Shown piece by piece: positions 3,836-42,200 of a stretch of 64,000 bases of DNA. Every line of letters begins with the position of its first letter. Within the stretch, counting starts at the first letter, position 1. The DNA comes from Lytechinus pictus (taxonomy: Eukaryota). The DNA lies in assembly GCF_037042905.1 (NCBI RefSeq), contig NC_087254.1, positions 16,678,001 through 16,742,000 on the forward strand, in the 5' to 3' direction. Below the pieces are notes generated by a model that was not told where the DNA came from, did not search any database, and saw only the letters and a program-made list of their open reading frames with translations. Both the position numbers and the translations under genes were made by a program.

Positions 3836-17538
<13,703 letters not shown>

Positions 17539-30200: not shown

Positions 30201-33200
30201 AGTACTACCTGGCAGCTCTGTTTGCCCATAGGATTTATGCTCTCAGAGGCAAATAGATTGAAAAAAAAATGCTCCAAATGGAGGAAAAAAAATGCACATA
30301 CTATTATTTAACAGGAAAATTTTGTTTCTACTGTGATTGAAATAAAAAAATAAAGGTGGGGGGGGGGGGGGGGGGGTTAATTCTCTGATATTCAAACTTA
30401 TACTTACTGTTCAGAATGGTACCTCAAGGACCAAATAAAGTCCAACAGGCTAACAGCCATCTGACGACATATCTAGACAAAAATATCAAATGAAATATCA
30501 AACCTAGTACATGTAAGTAATTTTGAATAAACAAAAGCACAAAAATACTAGTAATTGCTGCTCAGCTTCCCTCCTCCCTACATTCAAAACAATGTATGCA
30601 GTACTTAAAATCTTAACTTATCTTAGCTTCGCTTCTTATTTGGATGGTATTTCTAGATGAAATTCACTGTAATTTGACCAAGAATGCATATATAGCATTT
30701 CCATGTATTTGAATGCAAGGTAAAAGACCACTGTCGATTCAATGCCTTGCTCAAGGGCATAGGTGCCATGGCCAGGGATCGAACCCCGGACTTTCAAATG
30801 CCTAGTCAGGCGCCTTACACAGTGAGCCAGACTAGTTTGGGTGACTCACCGTTTTTTCGCTGTTTTTTCTCTCTTTTTTCTCCCTTTTTCCCCACAGGAA
30901 ACTGCTAGAAAAGGGCGAGAAAATGGCTAAAAAACGGCGACAAAAAAAGTGTACCGACTATGGAAAGCTAACTGTATGCAACAATGATTTTCATCAGAAT
31001 AAATTGGCGAATACCTCCCTTGGGGAAAACGGCTACAAAACAACTAATAAAGGGCAAATACCTCCCTCATGGAAAACGGCTAATAAATGGCGAATACCTT
31101 CCTTGTGGAAAACGGCTAAAAAACGGATAATAAAGGGCTAATACCTCCCTTGTGGAAAACGGCTAATAAATGGCGAATACCTTCCTTGTGGAAAACGGCT
31201 ACAAAATGGCTAAAGGGCTAATATCTCCCTTGCGGAAACGGTAAAACGGCTAATATAAGTGTGATACCTCCCTTGGGGAAAAAGCCTTCAAAACTGCTAA
31301 TAAATGGCGAAAGGCACAAAGTAATAATAAATAGGACTAACAAGTGCAAATCAGCAAATAATGTACCACACAAGCGGGTGAGTGTACAATTGTGACAACT
31401 TGGAATAACATTGACACTGCCGTAATGTATGGTGATATATAATACCAAACAATCTTCATTTTTTTCAATCATATAAAACCTTTTCTTAAAATTCATCAAA
31501 CTTCCACCATAAAGTAATCACAAATACCTACAAAATATGAAGATTTAAAAATGGCTGAAATCAATCGGCCTATATCTAAAAAAAAACTTATCAGCTTCCG
31601 ATTGCGCCCCTCTTCGCATGTGAAATGATTTTCACTTGTGGTTCGTATACCAAACATGTGTTTGGTACATGTATATTAACAAAAATCTATAATTAACTAA
31701 TTTTCACCATATTTTGTTATTTTTAGAAAATAGATACTTCATAAATATGATTTTTTTTTCATCATCTTTTTCTTTTGGAAAGGTGTTGCAAAGTGCTAAA
31801 TGTATGCAATATACTGTACTGTACTGTATTATTTTCTTTATCTTCTTGGGCTTGTTACCACAAAAGACCACAAATAGTAGACGGGGATTTGATATTATGC
31901 CCCCCTTTCCAAAAATTGAGGGACGCGTCCCCCTCAGGTTCCCGCCCATGAAGAAGGGAAAATAAGAGTAAAGAATAAAGTATTCAATGAAGTTTCAATC
32001 AAATTCAATTAAATTTTATTTTTTTCTGATTGACATTTTATCAAATTTCAAATGAAATATAAAAAAATATTGATATAAAACAATGAATGTAGGCCTATAC
32101 AATATGGAAATTAGATTTATGAAAGAAGGCGTAACCCCCCCCCCCCCACAGAAAGCAGGTATGTTATGCGCAGGGCAGGATGGGAGTATAGTAACGTTCA
32201 TAAGAGCTGAAGTGGCTTCCCCGGGTAAAATAACAATATTTTTATATGTATGGAATGAGAATTATTACTAAATATTACCCATGAAAACGAGAGCTTATTT
32301 CCAAAATGAGTTCTTAAGAAAATCTTAAGTTTATAGAAATGTTGAAAATATATATTCTACGTTTTCTATAGTCGCTTTTTCCCATTTTATGGAATGCATA
32401 TCACACATTTTCACAATTTTTTAGCCATTTTATGCAATGCACGTCGTACTACCCATTCGCCCTTTTTTTTTTTCTAACCCTTTTTTTCTCCATTTCATGC
32501 TCTCACCTCTTACTACCCATCCGCCCTTTCTGTTTTATTCGCCCTTTTCTCTCAGTTTTCTCTCCATTTTATGCACTGCACGCCTTACTACCCATTCGCC
32601 CTTTTCTCTCCGCTTTATGCAATGCACGCCTTACTACCCATTCGCCCTTTTGTCTCCGTTTTCTTTCCCTTTTGTCTCCGTTTATTAGCCGTTTTCTTTC
32701 AGTATCTTCACTCCTCTAACAGGATCCTCGGCCTTAACATTCGCCGTTTTCATGGGGAAATAAATAGCTCCGCTTATATTGCACAATGATGGCACTCCAT
32801 AATAATTCAAGATTTACGTAGGAAACCTAATGTAGCCGTTTTTTCTCCAAAAATTCTCCCTTTTCTAGCCGTTTTCAAAACGGCGAAAAAACTGCAACTT
32901 TGAATTTCCCATAGGTTATAACACACAAAACGGCTAAAAGAGGGCGAAAAAACTGCAGTGGCTCACTGTGTTAGACCACTCGGCCATGGCACCTCCATGC
33001 AGAAATCAATGGAAAATCAAACAATTGTAGATATATACATGTATAGCTATACTAAAATGAAATAGAAATAGTCTGCTTCGGCATAGTAGAATGCCGTAGA
33101 AAATGAAATAATAGATTTCAAGAGGAGCATAGCTCTAAAAAATAAAAGGTTAAGTCACACTCTTTGTCAGTGCCCATGGTGTGAAAAAAAAAAGAATTCA

Positions 33201-36200
33201 AAATCCGTACTTACTGTCGAGTGTACACAATGTCACAAACTGTTATTCTTTAATAATACTTCTTAAGGACGTTCCACAGTTATGTTTGTGCGCATTATGA
33301 TCTGCGCATAGTTTACACGCTGCGCGCTGACGTCACAATGGATGAACAGGTGATTAATTAGCTGCGGGTATGTGCTGATTTTTCTCATCTTCTGCACTTT
33401 AACTGCAGATCGGTTGCGTTATTTCATGAAGCTAAAAAATTGAATTATTCCATGGACCATTAAAAAAAAAGATTCTCTACAATTTCAAAATACTTTACTC
33501 TGCAGTGCTGCCAAGAATCACGAATATTACCCCGAGTTTGAATAAATGGTAGAGTGGTTTTGATTTTTTCTTCACATAGATACAAAGCCTTCGGCGCATT
33601 TTTGGTGTTTTAAAAAGCACATTTGCTCTAATAAAAATACTGATAGTTTAAAAACAAGCACATGAACCCCTATTTTTTAATGTTTGTTCCTCTTAGGTAT
33701 ACCTTCCTCTACAACTCTACAAATTTTGGTGAAAATGACATGGATTTTGAATAAAGTGCAGCATTTATTGTACTTTTGTAGTTTGTTACCGAAATTTCAC
33801 ATTTTTTTGATTGGGATTTTGTTATCTTTTACGCCATTTTTAAGAACTGACAGTGCTGTTAAACTTAAAATTGCAAACAAATAGCACTATAAATATATTC
33901 TCCATTCTAACGATACAATTATTAACTCTCTTGCGAAATATGATGACTTTTTCATGTATTTTGACTGAGTAATACAGGTTTAAACTCATTGTAGTAATCT
34001 TGGGCGGTCTAAAAATGCCAAATTCTTTTGAATGCGCAATTCTTAAGAACATCAATTTGGGTGAACTTTGAAGTTCTATAGCAAAAAATCAAGCACATGG
34101 ACCTATGTTAATTTTTGCATATTTCGAATATTAAGGTTCTAAAGTATCTATGTGCAAAGTATGGTGAAAATGACATGGATTTCACTTTAACCATGTTAAC
34201 TGTGGAACGTCCTTAATTCACTTGGTAATATAAAAATTCAGCCACATACTTTAGCCCTCCAAGGGAGCAACAAAAAGAGAGCTAAACTTTAAATACCTTT
34301 AACAACTCCCTCTCTTTCTCCTTTTCCTTTTTTGTTCTGTGGCAAATTCATAAATCTGATGAGTAGGTATTTGGGATATCTCTTATTGCAGATGAACTTA
34401 CTGGTGTGTTTTGTGCAGCATACATGGTGATTCCCAGAGTATACATCAGCCTTCCTAAGAGAAGGAAGTCGTTACCAAGCAAGTCCATCGTGTTCAACTT
34501 ACTGGAGTAAAAAAAAAATGAAAAAAAAGTAGACAGTAAAAACTATGATTGCATGTCACAAAGGCTTTTTTCTCACTTTACCTGAGAGATCATCTTTCGA
34601 AGCATTGCGGTCAGTTGTCAGCTCGCATGTGCAAGACGCCCTTAATTTGGGCTGAATTTGTCATATTTTCGAGAAATTGACCATGTTTCTCATGCCCCAG
34701 CGCCATGACCCACGTGGATTATGTCTTTTTCGATAATTGCAGACGATAAATGCGTACGTAAAGCGAGCGGCACGTACTGCATGCAGAGGTAAATGCAATC
34801 AGACAAGAGGGATCCATGCATCTTTCCAAATCCTTTTCTCGCCTACCCCAACTGTCGCACACCAATTTTGATGTCTTGCTCAGTAACCTTACCGATGCTC
34901 AGATATGGTGCTGTAGTTGGTACATTTCACTCAGGCAAAGTATCGGGCTGGGGTGGAGATATCGAGTGTGCAGTGGGCGACTGTCACGTTACATTTTTTT
35001 GGCTGCACTGATATCAAGTACGCAAAACCCTGGCCCCTGACCAAACTTTCCACTCCTTTTCTTCATTGTTCACCTTTAAAAAAATCTCTTTGTGTTTTAA
35101 AGAACAGTTAAGTAGTCGCAAGATATTTTTGCAGTGAGTTTTCTAAGGTCACAGGTGAGTGCAGCACGATATGGATCAAATTATTGCTGAAAGAAATTAG
35201 GCCGTGGCTGGGATTCGAAACCCACAACCCTCTGTATCAAAGTCCTGAGACTGATCCACAATGCTGTCACAGAAGACTACACGAATAGGAAAGTGAATGG
35301 ACAAATGAAGAAATTATAAATGTTTTGTTTTACCTGTCATATGACTTCAAAAGAGGGAAGAAGAAATGACCAGCCACAGGAGCAAAACGATTGATGGCAG
35401 GATTCGGAGCTGGTTTGCTTGGACCCTGTGTGAAGAGCAAGACATTTGGAATTTTTTAAATAATGAACCAGGTTCTAATATTTGCAATTTCATTGTGCTA
35501 CTGTCGTGGAGCAAATAAACAGAATGATGACAATGTGAAATACAGTAATAATACAGTAGGTAACTCATGAATATTTGACATGATTGAGAGATCACACATC
35601 CTGGCATTGGTTGGTGCATTGTAATGGTTAATGGGCAACTCCGGTCATTGATATTTTGCTTTGAAAAATTTATCGGTCTCTTTGCTTTGTGGTTATACCA
35701 AGCTTCAATCAGCATCTGAACTATTTTCAGAATTTAAAGTCATTTTGTTCTGGTTGAAAAAATATTTTTTTTCCAACCTGCAGTATTTTGGGCAGGGACA
35801 TCACAACATTGGCGAGTCACAAGGTTTTATATTTGCACCTTGTTTGTTCATAATGTGTAATTACACCTCGGTCTCATGATCTGATCTGTAGTTCATTTCA
35901 AGAATAGGTTGAATGAATAGCAAGACATGACCTGTTCAAAATGCACTTTCATTTATTTCATATGTATCAGGGTCTATTGTTTTTAATACTAATATGATAA
36001 ATAAAAAGGGAGAATTTTGAAGACAAGACTCCACCTTTGCGAATCTCCTCGTCTTGCTCTCTATCCTCTTCTGCACAATATCTCTCCAATTCTCTTCTTG
36101 ACTTTCTTTAGCTTTGTGTTCCTGTGGGTTTACCATCCCCGAACTCTTTGAGGCAGGACCTGGGTCTTCGGATGGTTTGGAGAGGTCCTGAGCAGCTGCA

Positions 36201-39200
36201 GCTAATACCTACATTAGGAGATATCAAGTTCAGTGTTGACCTATTGGTGTTGGTGTTAAGACAATTTTCACATCAGCAGAGCACCTTCAAATTAAGAATT
36301 CAACAATATACGTGTAGACATGTTTTACTACCGTACTTTTATTACTCTTCTTTAGCTTATCTTTTATCCGACAAAAACAAAATAGACCCCAAAAGCAAAG
36401 ATTAACTATGACTTTATTAATCACCCATCTTCAAGTTACCCAATGATTATACACTGTACATGTAAAATGTATGTTGTGGCTGGGCTGATAGAACCTTTTG
36501 AGGTTTTGAGGGCAGCTTAGAAAAGGCTGTATTTAAAAAATATAGCAATGGTGGCAGTCTCATATTGTCTGAAAACAGTCTCCTGATAGTGATAATAATA
36601 ATAGTAATAGCGGTATATTTACCCAGGGTAGCCACTTCAGTTCCTAAAACTCCCAGCCGGCCCTGCTATTATTATCCCGGCTTTAGCTGGGCTGCTAGGC
36701 GCTCAAGCATTCAAGAAATTAATTCTGCTGGGTACCCATTCACCTCACCTGGGTCGAGTGCAGCACAGTGGGGATAAATTTCTTGCTGAAGGAAAACACG
36801 CCATGGCTAGGATTCAAACCGACGACCCTCTGTTTGAAAGGAAACAGTCAGAACCACTAGACCAAGACGCCTGATACCTGTGAAGGACTCTTTTGAGGCA
36901 AAAACAAGGTTGCTACACATGTTATAACTCTAAAATTAAGCTCATTCTGACCTGTCATCAACATTTGATCATATTAAATTTTGAGGTATGAGGTTTATCA
37001 GCCCAGCCACAATGTATTGTTTTATATACCTCTAAGATATCCATCCTTTGTCTGATGTTGTAGTTTCTATTGTAGAACTCTCCAGTTAAATACTTTGATG
37101 TCTAAATTTAAAGAAGAAAGAAACATGTCAACGTCATCAGCAACATTATAAAAATAAACACCATCAAAATTACAATTACAAATGCACCAATGCTTACAGG
37201 CATTGTGGTGTGCACCTGTAATTCAAGCTACGAGGGGGAAGTTACAAACGGATGCAGAAGTTTTAGCCCTGGTCACGTCTTTCGGATGGTGATGTTAAAG
37301 GTTGGGCCCAGATGTAAATAATCTTATCTGATTGATATATTTCTATAGAATCTCAATTACATTAACACTCACACACTATCATTTTATATAATCAGAAGAT
37401 CAAATACAACCCCCCCAAAAAAAAAAACCAACAACATAATTTTATCAATGTCAAGAAGTTCCCCCCTTGCAAAAACTAATATCTCACTGATAATAAATGA
37501 TTCAATAATCTTAAAATCAGAATGATCATTATTGATGTAATCAACATTATCAGCATCAAGGTAACAGTAAATTACATGCAAAGCAGGCAAAAAATTATAA
37601 TTTGTTTTTTTCTTTCATCAGTTTCTTTTAAAAATTACAATCAATATCAATTTCAAGGTCTAAAAGAATGTTACGCTGCCCTAATCCGATAGAACATAAA
37701 ATGCGAAAAAAAAAACCACATACCTGTAGATGCAATTTTTAATCTTTTACTTCGGAGATAAAAAATATACAAAATGCAATGTTTTTGTGAGAAAATATCA
37801 GACTTGGGCAAAGAATTTGCTCATACTTCTATTCAACTGATTTATAAAAAAATACTTATATATGCATTTCAACTGCATATATAAACCATCCCATGCATGA
37901 TTTCCTTTTTGCAGAGCAGAATCAAAGATACATGTAAAAAGAACAAGTGGAGCACCTCTGGTAGTCTCGCCTGCATTACGCGATTCAATATAGCAACAGT
38001 GCTGACTTTGAAAATGACTTTAAAATAATCATTCACAAAAAACACAATTCATATGATGATAAAATACTATGTTCATTGACCCTAAATGACATTTGACCTT
38101 GATCGTGTGACCGAAGACTTGTGCAAGACAATCAGTGATACTTGATTACCCTTACATGTATGTCCACATTTCATGAACTAGATCCATAAACTTTCAAAGT
38201 TATGATGGCAATTCAACAAATACCCCAAACACGGCCAAAGTTCATTGATGTTGGTCATGTGACCTTAAACATGTGCAAGATGTTCACTGATGCTTAATTA
38301 CTCTTACATGTATGTCCAAATTTAATGAACTAGATCCATATACTTTCAGATTTATGACATTAAGAAAACTTAACCTTGTTAAGATTTTGTTTCTATTTCC
38401 CCAATATAATCTAAGTTCATTGACCCAAAATGACCTTTGACCCAGGCCATGACATCTGAAACTCACAAAGGATGCTCAGTGATACTTGATTACTATTATG
38501 TCGAAGTTTCATGAACCAGATCTATAAACTTTCAAAGTTATGATAGAAATCACCTAATACCCCCAACATGGCCAAAATTCATTGACCCTAAATGACCTTT
38601 GACCTTGATCATGTGACCTGTAAATCAGGCAGGATGTTCAGTAAATCTTGATTACCCTTATGTTCAAGTTTTGTGAACTAGGTCCACATACTTTCTAAGT
38701 TATGGTGAAATTTCAAAAACTTAACCTTCGCTTAAGATTTTGATGTCGATTCCCCTAACATGGTCTAAGTTCATTGACCCTAAATGACCTTTGACCTTGG
38801 TCACGTGACCTCAAACTCCGGCAGGATGTTCAGTAATACTTGGTAATTATCATACCAGGTTTCATGAGCTAGGTCCATTTCCTTCCCCAAGTTATGATGG
38901 TATTTCAAAAACTTGACCTTTGGTTAAGATTTGATGTTGACGCCGCCGCTGCTGTCGGAAAAGCGGTGCCTATAGTCTCGCTGTGCTGTGGAGGCAAGAC
39001 AAAAATAAAATATCGACTGACCAACCCAGTTTCTGATTTTTGGCTAATGAGGGGAAACAAAACAATTTGATTTATGCTTAAAGTTGAACTGATTTTCTGA
39101 ACGTAAATTGTTCATACCTCAATAGGGCAGTTTACTGCTAATGCCACCATAGCCGAGTGTCTGAGAAATCTAAAGTTTTCTGTGTTGTATTGGTCCTCCA

Positions 39201-42200
39201 GATGAAGCAAGATGGCCACAAACTGACTACAAACCTGCATGGAAATCAGTACAGAACAAAAAAGAACAATATACAGTTATACTGCGATAATATATCATGA
39301 TGATGAAGATTATGATGATCTTGATGAATAGCATTTGCATAGTGCCATTTATTTTTCAGAAAAATTAAAAAGCACTGCATCCCCGTTCCACAGTATGACA
39401 CATATTAATCATAAAGATGCTAGAAAACGTACATATTTATTTCAAAATTCGAAAGTCTCGAGGTTGGTACAAAAAAAGAAAGATTGGCTCTGATCACCTG
39501 AACATTCATCTTGTGCCAACATACATACAGAAACTAAAGAAGGCGTCTCCAGTTTCTAGGCAACGGTATGACTGGTCAGATGATGCAACGGAGCGCCTAC
39601 CAGCCTGCATAGATTGTATGAACTGGGACGTTCTGTTCAATTCCACGGCTACGCTTGATGAGGCAACGGAGGTCATCAGTGCCTACGTCAACTTTTATAT
39701 TGACTCGAACATTCCGCATAAAACATCAAAGGTTTATCAGAACAATAAACCATGGGTTTCCAAAGAATTGAGGGAATTGCTAAAAGCCAAAAATCAGGCA
39801 CTCATCGCTGGGGATCGCATAGAAGTAAAAACTGTGCAGAAGTGTATTGAACTTGCGGAATCTTTCACGGAGTGAAATATTCTTAAATAAAATGCCCAAT
39901 GAAGGGGCTTAAATCTATATTAAGTCCAACTTGATCTTCTACTTTCTTTTTATAAGTTTTAATTATCTAATACCAAAATAAAATAATGAGTTTACAGATG
40001 ACATCAATTTGACCATGGGTACATGGAAATTAGACTTTTGAAGTGTTTTACATGAGTGAGCAACTATTTACATATAATTTCCATATTAATGAACCAAGAA
40101 TTAAAGTCTGATTCTCTTACATCTTTTAAATCATCTGGCTTTGCTCTGATGAGCTTCTCTGCAACCTTAAGACTAGCTTCGGTCAGCTCAGGGGCATCTC
40201 TTGAAGTCAAACCTGTTCAATGGAATAAGAGAGGGAAAGCATTCATAAAACTTGACTAAAACCAATATAGGTTTGATGAATTCAGAATCTGTAGTTTTTC
40301 AAGTAACCTGTACATGTATGTACTAAAGAAAGTTAAGATTTAATCTGGGATTTTTTTTCTTCAATTACTGCTAGAAAAATTGGTACAGGCGGAAGGGAAG
40401 ATCATGTATACAGCAATCAACCATGGTGAAAGGAGGCATAAACAGCTCTGAATGTTCAAGTTGGAAGTCAGAATGTGCAAAGGCATCATGTTTAAGAACT
40501 GGGTAATTCCATATATGAGAAATATCTTTTTTCTCCATCGCTACTACTCAAGCCATGATAAATTGAAAGCATAACAGCTTTTCACCTGAAGCAATAACTG
40601 GAAGCAAAAAAAAAAAAAATGATTTCAGGAAGTTCCAGCTAATGGGCAACGGTATTGTCCTATAAACAAACGTGGTAGGTTTGAGTCAACCTTGTCAACC
40701 ATTGTGCATTGTAAATGATAGAGCTACAAAAATCTGAAGGGGAAGTTACAAATTTAATCTGGAAAATTTGTAATAAAAAAAAAATCAATATTCTATGAGA
40801 AAAAAAATTACTTTTGGTATATTGGATGGTATACATTGAGGACGCCGAACCTAATAATTCTGACCCCCCACCCCCCAAAAAAAGAAAACAGACAAAGAAA
40901 AAAGTGGATAGGAAATCAAAATGATTTTAAATAACATTACCAATATTTTCATGGAAATTAAACAAGGAGTGGGCAAAAACAAACACATAATTCTCTGTTC
41001 CATTACCATCAATACAGTCCCGAACGTAAACAGGTACTTTGACCTTCGTGACCTTGGTGTCATGTGACATGTCGCAGGGTTCAAACTCATCATCACTGTA
41101 AAGTAAGAGGAAGTAAAAGGGTCACTGAAAGATGAATGAAGCTGTGAATCAAAACATGCTGTATGAACTATGTAAATGCACGGCGGGCAAAAGATTAAGA
41201 AATATGTTTGCATTTACATAGTTTGAATAATAAAAAAAAAAAAAGCAAAAAAAGAGAAAACAAAATGACAGAAGGATCAAATGAAACATGGATGGGAAAT
41301 AGATTCCCTGGGGGGGGGGGGGGGTAGTCAAATATATTGCTGTATACATGCGTGATAAAAAAATGTGTTAAAAGGGGTGTGTTTTCAGTTTTGGACGTGG
41401 GCCACGTGTGCACTCGTTAAGGGTATCAAAAACACTGATTTTCAAGAAAAAGGGTTTTTAAAGACAGGTCAATGGTCAATCACTGGGTCAAACATATTTA
41501 GGGTATGATTTTTGAAAGACTAGCCAAACGTGTTTAGGGTATGTTTTTTCCCCAAACATTTTCCCAAGGGCTTTTTCCTACTTGTTTCTGAAAATTGCTC
41601 GGGTTCTTCCCGATAGTATACAAAACCTGTTTAGGGGTCATATTCTGGCGACAACTTGTTTAGGGGTCAAAATGTGTAAATAAAGCCTGCGAAAAACTTG
41701 TTTAGGGGGTTATTATGCACACAGACAAAAACTTGTTTAGGGGTGTTTGGAAGTAATTTGGTCATGCATGTGTACAGCGATACATTTGACTGGCTCCCCA
41801 GATAGATTCATTTTGAATTAAAGAATAAGAAAGTTCTTTATGAAAATTCAACTAGAAGGAAAAAATAAAAATTTCAAGTCTGTAAAGAAACATAAACAGC
41901 AAAAAAATCTGTGTGCATGGAAAAAGAGACAATATATTTTCAGACAGTGTGGTCATTGATATTGAATGGGCGACTGCTATGCATGGTGTTGAGCTAAGCT
42001 GACAAGAGGAAAACCAGTTAACCCGTTGTTTACAGAGTTCTGTGATTCCCATTGACTTTGTATAGGGAACATTCAGTTCATCATGACAATAGGTTAACAG
42101 TTAATAAACAGGTTTTAAAAGGCAAATCTAATTACCTGTCAAATTCTTCCTCTCTCCCCTGTTCTTGGTTTGGTGCATCACTGACTCTACACCCTACTTG

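What the first reader, a model, noticed from the sequence alone, without database searches (positions are those of the whole stretch)
30815..32973. DNA transposon whose two ends are the exact V(D)J RSS heptamer CACAGTG
Seen: a 2153-bp element in TELO2 intron 16 with 12-bp TIRs CACAGTGAGCCA...TGGCTCACTGTG. Its boundaries are unambiguous because it splits a SINE between the A and B boxes and duplicates TTA. Both arms carry dense AAAACGGCTA/AAGGGCGAA subterminal repeats and ~40-45-bp tandem arrays (31010-31310, 32420-32660), and there is no ORF. Known: RAG1 derives from Transib/RAG-like transposases with CAC-starting ends and 5-bp TSDs, and sea urchins encode RAG1L/RAG2L. CAC ends with a 3-bp TWA TSD are characteristic of Chapaev3. 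Inference: this is a non-autonomous Chapaev3/CMC-like family with a perfect heptamer but no ACAAAAACC nonamer at 12 or 23 nt. It is a possible intermediate or convergent RSS-like end. An autonomous partner may exist elsewhere in the genome.
Basis: partly seen in the sequence, partly recalled or inferred. Interest (0 to 1): 0.7.

Follow-up and report, generated by a model that had tools for sequence, protein, structure and literature searches.

The report
Non-coding CACTA-type transposon, RSS-like tips
This is one copy of an ordinary, roughly 48-copy family of non-coding cut-and-paste jumping genes in a sea urchin; its tips spell the V(D)J heptamer CACAGTG, but its 3-base, AT-biased target duplications place it with CACTA/EnSpm-type elements, not with the RAG/Transib lineage or the Chapaev3 group.

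Summary
A 2153-bp element (30818-32970) has perfect 12-bp inverted ends starting CACAGTG. It is flanked by a duplicated TTA and splits a tRNA-derived SINE. It has dense subterminal repeats and no ORF above 95 aa.

At genome scale it belongs to a family of about 48 copies. The terminal 24 nt are almost invariant. 19 of 20 strictly paired copies carry a perfect 3-bp duplication, but only 5 of 19 are TWA and none shows the A-TWA-T context that defines Chapaev3.

The window copy is an internal-deletion derivative of a 6.6-kb form. At least four loci share its deletion junction, so the short form has itself transposed.

No copy encodes a transposase; this covers the 6.6-kb form, the four longer copies I read (7.1-14.8 kb) and the solo ends I held. 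Nothing else in the assembly shares the ends.

RAG, RAG-like and Transib elements make 5-bp GC-rich duplications and carry an A-rich nonamer, and neither feature is present here.

Best reading: a non-autonomous CMC (EnSpm/CACTA-Chapaev) type family moved in trans by an unidentified transposase. The exact heptamer is a coincidence on top of the CAC...GTG termini this clade shares. One small extra: a T6CGC box lies 10 nt from the heptamer at one end and 26 nt at the other, in every matched end. Earlier notes report other transposons in this genome, but not this family.

The parts
30815..30817 (.). left copy of the 3-bp target site duplication (TTA)
   Evidence: family-wide 3-bp duplications
30818..30829 (+). 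left 12-bp terminal inverted repeat, starting with the heptamer CACAGTG
30851..30860 (+). left T6CGC box (GTTTTTTCGC), 26 nt after the heptamer
   Evidence: same spacing in every left end that matched the pattern
30818..31311 (+). left subterminal arm with 8 AAAACGG motifs and the tandem array at 30998-31311
31858..31859 (.). internal-deletion junction (master positions 985|5385), shared with three other loci
32417..32970 (+). right subterminal arm with tandem arrays (32417-32695) and inverted AAAACGG/GGGCGA motifs
32944..32953 (-). right T6CGC box, 10 nt inward of the heptamer
32959..32970 (-). right 12-bp terminal inverted repeat
32971..32973 (.). right copy of the target site duplication (TTA)
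30762..30817 (-). 3' part of the tRNA-like head of the interrupted SINE (B-box side); the SINE body continues to about 30690
32974..32990 (-). 5' part of the tRNA-like head of the interrupted SINE (A-box side)

Best explanation
The element is a non-autonomous cut-and-paste DNA transposon. It is one of about 48 copies of a single, isolated family in this sea-urchin genome. By its structural hallmarks it belongs to the CMC clade (EnSpm/CACTA-Mirage-Chapaev); the subgroup cannot be resolved without the transposase. Shown: CAC...GTG termini, a 12-bp perfect TIR, 3-bp AT-biased but otherwise unspecific target duplications, and dense subterminal repeats in both arms. Also shown: the window copy is an internal-deletion derivative of a 6.6-kb non-coding form, at least four loci share its deletion junction so the short form itself transposed, and no copy that I read encodes a transposase. 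Inferred: a DDE transposase supplied in trans binds the subterminal AAAACGG/GGGCGA/T6CGC motifs, cuts at the CAC/GTG tips and integrates with a 3-bp stagger. That transposase comes either from an element with different ends, or from a partner that is absent from this assembly or extinct. Also inferred: the identity of the first seven bases with the RSS heptamer reflects the CAC...GTG termini common to the whole clade plus chance at positions 4-7, not a RAG-related end.
For: Ends, duplication and SINE split. Census: 48 left and 43 right ends against 0 for controls; the 12-mer TIR occurs 123 times against 26 for the control, with no non-family inverted pairs among the 100 places listed. Duplications: 19/20 perfect 3-bp, 15 different triplets. 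Deletion-derivative structure and 98.7% identity of two 6.6-kb copies. Shared junction in four loci at 90-93% identity. No coding capacity. Long copies are nested insertions. Solo ends are truncated fragments. Motif architecture. Literature: CAC..GTG plus 3-bp TSD is used to classify elements as EnSpm, and the CMCT clade shares CA..TG termini and 2-5 bp TSDs (PMC12730594). Chapaev has 3-4 bp TSDs and CAC/GTG termini (PMC4079192). Repbase classifies non-autonomous elements by termini and TSD (PMC4455052). The genome holds intact Transposase_21-type ORFs of 650-914 aa.
Against: No transposase is linked to the family, so the superfamily call rests on termini, duplication length and subterminal repeats alone. 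The one CACTA-type transposase locus I could read (L078) has neither the heptamer nor the family motifs within 10 kb. Other superfamilies that I recall making 3-bp duplications (Zator, Academ) could not be excluded with these tools. I could not compare with Repbase or Dfam.
Confidence: 0.78

Rival explanations
1. It is a non-autonomous Chapaev3 element, mobilised by a Chapaev3 transposase.
For: CAC...GTG termini and a TTA duplication at the window copy. Chapaev3 elements have TWA duplications (PMC4079192).
Against: Across the family only 5 of 19 duplications are TWA and 0 of 19 sit between A and T. Triplets such as CCC, TCT, ACA, CAT, TGT and ATC occur. The paper reports that all Chapaev3 elements examined have TWA between A and T.
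Confidence: 0.04
2. The ends are RSS-like signals of a Transib/RAG-like transposase, either an evolutionary intermediate or a substrate of the urchin's RAG1L/RAG2L.
For: The first seven bases equal the consensus RSS heptamer in essentially every copy. Both ends have a second conserved box at unequal spacing, 10 versus 26 nt, which superficially recalls the 12/23 asymmetry.
Against: Duplications are 3 bp and AT-biased, against 5 bp and GC-rich for RAG, RAG-like and Transib elements. There is no A-rich nonamer: the second box is T-rich on the heptamer strand and is a copy of the element's own subterminal repeat. The spacing difference is 16 nt, not about 11. Heptamer conservation is no stronger than that of neighbouring positions.
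Confidence: 0.03
3. It belongs to another superfamily that makes 3-bp duplications (PIF/Harbinger, Zator or Academ).
For: The 3-bp duplication length alone is compatible. The AT bias at the target faintly recalls Harbinger's TWA.
Against: Harbinger's TWA specificity is not met (5/19). CAC...GTG termini with long arrays of subterminal repeats are the CMC hallmark. I have no tool evidence on the termini of Zator or Academ.
Confidence: 0.12

Closest known systems
EnSpm/CACTA superfamily (CMC clade), non-autonomous derivatives
   Same: 5'-CAC...GTG-3' termini, short perfect TIR, 3-bp duplication without strict sequence specificity, many subterminal direct and inverted repeats distributed unequally between the two arms, and internal-deletion derivatives that keep transposing.
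   Different: The terminal pentamer is CACAG rather than CACTA. No transposase is linked to the family. The longest form (6.6 kb) is itself non-coding.
Chapaev / Chapaev3 transposons
   Same: Invariant CAC and GTG termini and a 3-4 bp duplication (PMC4079192).
   Different: Chapaev3's TWA duplication between A and T is not met (5/19 and 0/19). Chapaev-type transposase motifs could not be tested.
Transib, ProtoRAG/RAGL TIRs and V(D)J recombination signal sequences
   Same: A heptamer beginning CAC; here all seven bases equal the RSS consensus, against CACAATG in Transib and CACTATG in ProtoRAG. A second conserved box at unequal distance from the two tips.
   Different: The duplication is 3 bp and AT-biased, not 5 bp and GC-rich. 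There is no A-rich nonamer at 12 or 23 nt. The spacing asymmetry is 16 nt. There are hundreds of bases of subterminal repeats, which RSSs and RAGL TIRs lack.

Membership tests
CMC clade (EnSpm/CACTA-Mirage-Chapaev) | termini 5'-CAC...GTG-3' | tested here: met
   Nearly all of 48 left and 43 right ends; exceptions are three point variants at position 1 plus one degenerate left end.
CMC clade (EnSpm/CACTA-Mirage-Chapaev) | target site duplication of 2-4 bp (3 bp for EnSpm) | tested here: met
   19/20 strictly paired copies have a perfect 3-bp duplication.
CMC clade (EnSpm/CACTA-Mirage-Chapaev) | [quoted passage not shown] | not testable with these tools
   No copy encodes a protein and no element shares the ends.
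Chapaev3 | TWA target site duplication | tested here: not met
   5 of 19.
Chapaev3 | insertion between A (5') and T (3') flanking the duplication | tested here: not met
   0 of 19.
Transib / RAG-like transposons | 5-bp, GC-rich target site duplication | tested here: not met
   No pair has a 5-bp match; the duplications are 3 bp and AT-biased.
Transib / RAG-like transposons | heptamer-like CAC tip followed by an A-rich nonamer-like block at about 12 or 23 nt | tested here: not met
   The heptamer is met. The blocks at those spacings are T-rich or G-rich.
PIF/Harbinger | TWA 3-bp duplication | tested here: not met
   5 of 19.

The most novel reading that the evidence does not exclude
The fixed bipartite, asymmetric ends (a shared 12-bp tip, then a T6CGC box after 5 nt at one end and 21 nt at the other, in all 73-75 matched ends) might reflect a paired-end rule, analogous to 12/23, in a 3-bp-duplicating CMC transposase. 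If so, the heptamer-plus-second-box logic of RSSs would be older and wider in the CMC-Transib clade than RAG/Transib alone.
Probability: 0.05. Interest if true: 0.6.

Novelty: new member of a known kind. Interest (0 to 1): 0.2.

Why it matters
It matters little beyond annotation. The result documents a young, low-copy, entirely non-autonomous CACTA-type family in a sea urchin. It also shows that an exact RSS heptamer at a transposon tip is not in itself evidence of a RAG connection: duplication length, target composition and the second signal element all point elsewhere. The family could be a convenient substrate if its transposase is found, because the ends are invariant, the short 2.15-kb form is demonstrably mobile, and the two ends are fixedly asymmetric.

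Tried and rejected
1. An autonomous copy among family members. I paired nearly all left and right ends and read four of the five longest copies, of 7.1, 11.4 and 14.8 kb, plus two 6.6-kb copies. The extra length is nested insertions and there is no transposase-like frame. The interiors of the 7.4-kb (C8:4638232) and 10.8-kb (C8:28305995) copies were not read; only part of the 7.4-kb interior was seen to match the master.
2. Pfam on ten stop-free pieces of the 6.6-kb form gave nothing.
3. A partner with the same 12-bp TIR. The excess of 12-mer hits over the control is fully accounted for by the family, and the listed places show no non-family inverted pairs (23 of the 123 places were not listed).
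4. A partner or sister family with a different TIR tail or a different heptamer but the same T6CGC box: none found.
5. A relative sharing the internal 1.8 kb: only family copies, plus an unrelated abundant repeat in the first ~360 nt.
6. Reading the termini of the genome's CACTA-type transposase loci. One locus (L078) showed no family motifs.
7. Insertion polymorphism at this locus. The public runs found hold only other copies or relatives, not the unique flanks, so this was not informative.
8. Yuan and Wessler 2011 (PMC3093488) is not held in the library.
9. Repbase and Dfam are not available here.

Full report
**Observation.**
- TTA lies at 30815-30817 and CACAGTGAGCCA at 30818-30829. The perfect reverse complement lies at 32959-32970, followed by TTA at 32971-32973. 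The element is 2153 bp.
- Beyond the 12 perfect bases the arms are only about 80% complementary (pair I11).
- Tandem Repeats Finder confirms arrays at 30998-31311 and 32417-32695.
- No ORF in the element exceeds 95 aa.
- Deleting the element and one TTA restores a tRNA-like gene on the minus strand (ARAGORN, relaxed threshold only).
- Contigs from public runs that carry uninterrupted copies of the same SINE read through the site with a single TTA (tables 5c and 7). These serve as paralogous empty sites.
- The genome's only Telomere_reg-2 domain hit is at window 39067-39237 on the minus strand. An intronic position in TELO2 is therefore plausible, but I did not verify the intron number.

**The family.**
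- Searching the window's own 812-Mb assembly with the two 180-bp ends returned 40 or more matches each.
- Exact-pattern censuses give 48 left ends and 43 right ends (up to 2 mismatches in 24 nt), against 0 for the reversed controls.
- The bare 12-mer occurs 123 times against 26 for its control, so the excess equals the family.
- The first 24 nt and the last 24 nt are identical in nearly all copies. In an alignment of 29 ends, the first 20 nt are 0.2% non-consensus, against 1-5% further in. The last ~100 nt of the right arm are equally invariant.
- The heptamer is therefore not singled out. No copy varies at heptamer positions 4-7; three copies vary at position 1 and one left end has a degenerate tip.

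**Target sites.**
- In 20 strictly paired copies, 19 have a perfect 3-bp duplication, where chance gives 1/64 per pair. None has a 5-bp match.
- Fifteen different triplets occur, including CCC, TCT, ACA, CAT, TGT and ATC.
- Only 5 of 19 are TWA and 0 of 19 lie in an A-TWA-T context. The target is merely AT-biased.

**Structure.**
- Two 6.6-kb copies (L072, L073) are 98.7% identical over their full length.
- The window copy aligns to master positions 1-985 and 5385-6591, so it is an internal-deletion derivative.
- Three other loci (C8:2996583, C12:16490712, C4:18633367) align across the same junction at 90-93% identity. The short form has therefore itself transposed, and not very recently.
- Each arm has T-strand motifs (CCGTTTT and a T6CGC box) in the first ~50 nt. 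In the 6.6-kb master, 8-10 copies of AAAACGG plus GGGCGA boxes follow in the opposite orientation out to ~430 nt; the window copy has 8 and 5.
- The T6CGC box lies 26 nt after the heptamer at the left end and 10 nt after it at the right end, in every one of the 73-75 matched ends.

**Coding capacity and partner.**
- The 6.6-kb form has no stop-free frame above 168 aa, and the frames it has are low-complexity. Ten of them gave no Pfam hit at E up to 1.
- The 7.1-, 11.4- and 14.8-kb copies are the same element with nested insertions. The interiors of the 7.4-kb and 10.8-kb copies were not read.
- Solo ends are truncated fragments.
- No other element in the assembly shares the 12-bp TIR as an inverted pair among the listed places. 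None has the heptamer plus box or a variant heptamer plus box. None shares the internal 1.8 kb.
- The genome does contain intact Transposase_21-type ORFs of 650-914 aa. Earlier notes of this scan report intact 16-25 kb two-gene CACTA families in it and name the species as Lytechinus pictus (unchecked by me).
- The one such locus I could read has none of the family's motifs.
I did not seek those letters by another route.

**Comparison with what is known.**
- Chapaev elements have 3-4 bp duplications and invariant CAC/GTG termini. Chapaev3 elements all show TWA duplications inserted between A and T (PMC4079192).
- CAC..GTG termini with 3-bp duplications are used to classify elements as EnSpm. 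The wider EnSpm-Mirage-Chapaev-Transib clade shares CA..TG termini and 2-5 bp duplications (PMC12730594).
- Repbase classifies non-autonomous elements by termini and duplication (PMC4455052).
- Transib TIRs have a CACAATG heptamer and an A-rich nonamer at 23 nt (PMC1131882). ProtoRAG has CACTATG (PMC8289069).
- RAG, RAG-like and Transib elements all make 5-bp GC-rich duplications, and the most RSS-like TIRs (P. flava RAGL-A) carry an A/T-rich nonamer with a 10-bp spacer asymmetry (PMC10629977).
- The present family fails the Chapaev3 test (duplication sequence and context). It also fails the Transib/RAG tests (duplication length and composition, nonamer). It meets every structural CMC hallmark that could be tested.

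**Mechanism.**
- Shown: cut-and-paste structure, 3-bp staggered integration, mobility of deletion derivatives, and dependence on a transposase supplied in trans, since there is no coding capacity.
- Inferred: a CMC-type DDE transposase recognises the subterminal motifs and cleaves at the CAC/GTG tips. Its own element either has different ends or is missing from this assembly.
- Given that CAC is obligatory in this clade, an exact match at positions 4-7 has a chance of roughly 1 in 256 per family. With the very large number of CMC-type families known across animals, that is expected to happen somewhere.
- The 10-versus-26-nt asymmetry is a real, fixed feature. However, the box is a copy of the element's own subterminal repeat, and from general knowledge of En/Spm (not tested here) unequal arms are usual in CACTA elements. 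I rate a 12/23-like rule as unlikely (about 5%).

**Public reads.** The only runs found hold 10% or less of the sampled words. When laid, they show other copies of the SINE and of the element at 88-99% identity in three coded organisms, but not the unique flanks of this locus. Insertion polymorphism here is therefore untested.

**Verdict.** This is a new member of a known kind, of low interest.

Noticed in passing
G000:C11:18645964, C10:30079926, C19:528181, C14:1492420, C13:28965433, C8:25613545, C1:26467200, C21:13944018: Eight open frames of 650-914 aa with a Transposase_21 (CACTA tnp2) domain; two pairs have near-identical lengths, suggesting recently active CACTA-type families in this genome. 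The C14 one (L078, 914 aa) has only that one Pfam domain and no short TIR/TSD pair within 10 kb.
   Followed up: partly
G000:C10:30298204-30298392 (+): The single genome hit to the RAG1 N-terminal (RAG1_imp_bd) family, in a 109-aa open frame at E=2e-5. It lies within ~220 kb of two Transposase_21 hits on the same contig. It could be a RAG1L or Chapa-domain exon.
   Followed up: no
L073:1300-1660 (element positions ~1200-1560 of the 6.6-kb form): This ~360-nt stretch is a separate, abundant repeat (1528 first-look candidates genome-wide, 74-85% identity), probably a small element nested in or captured by the 6.6-kb form.
   Followed up: no
window 30690-30817 and 32971-33000 (minus strand): A tRNA-derived SINE that is very abundant in public contigs of this and related organisms (summed depths up to tens of thousands). 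The region at 33228-33400 is another very high-copy repeat.
   Followed up: partly
window 39067-39237 (minus strand): The only Telomere_reg-2 (TELO2) domain hit in the genome; the match contains one TGA, probably an exon boundary rather than a defect.
   Followed up: no
L073 and L064 (copies at C11:11109175 and C5:26670861); C10:8084333: Three copies do not show a clean 3-bp duplication (ata/tat; aat/taa, which would fit a 4-bp taat; aga/cta). This may be post-insertion mutation or occasional 4-bp staggers.
   Followed up: no
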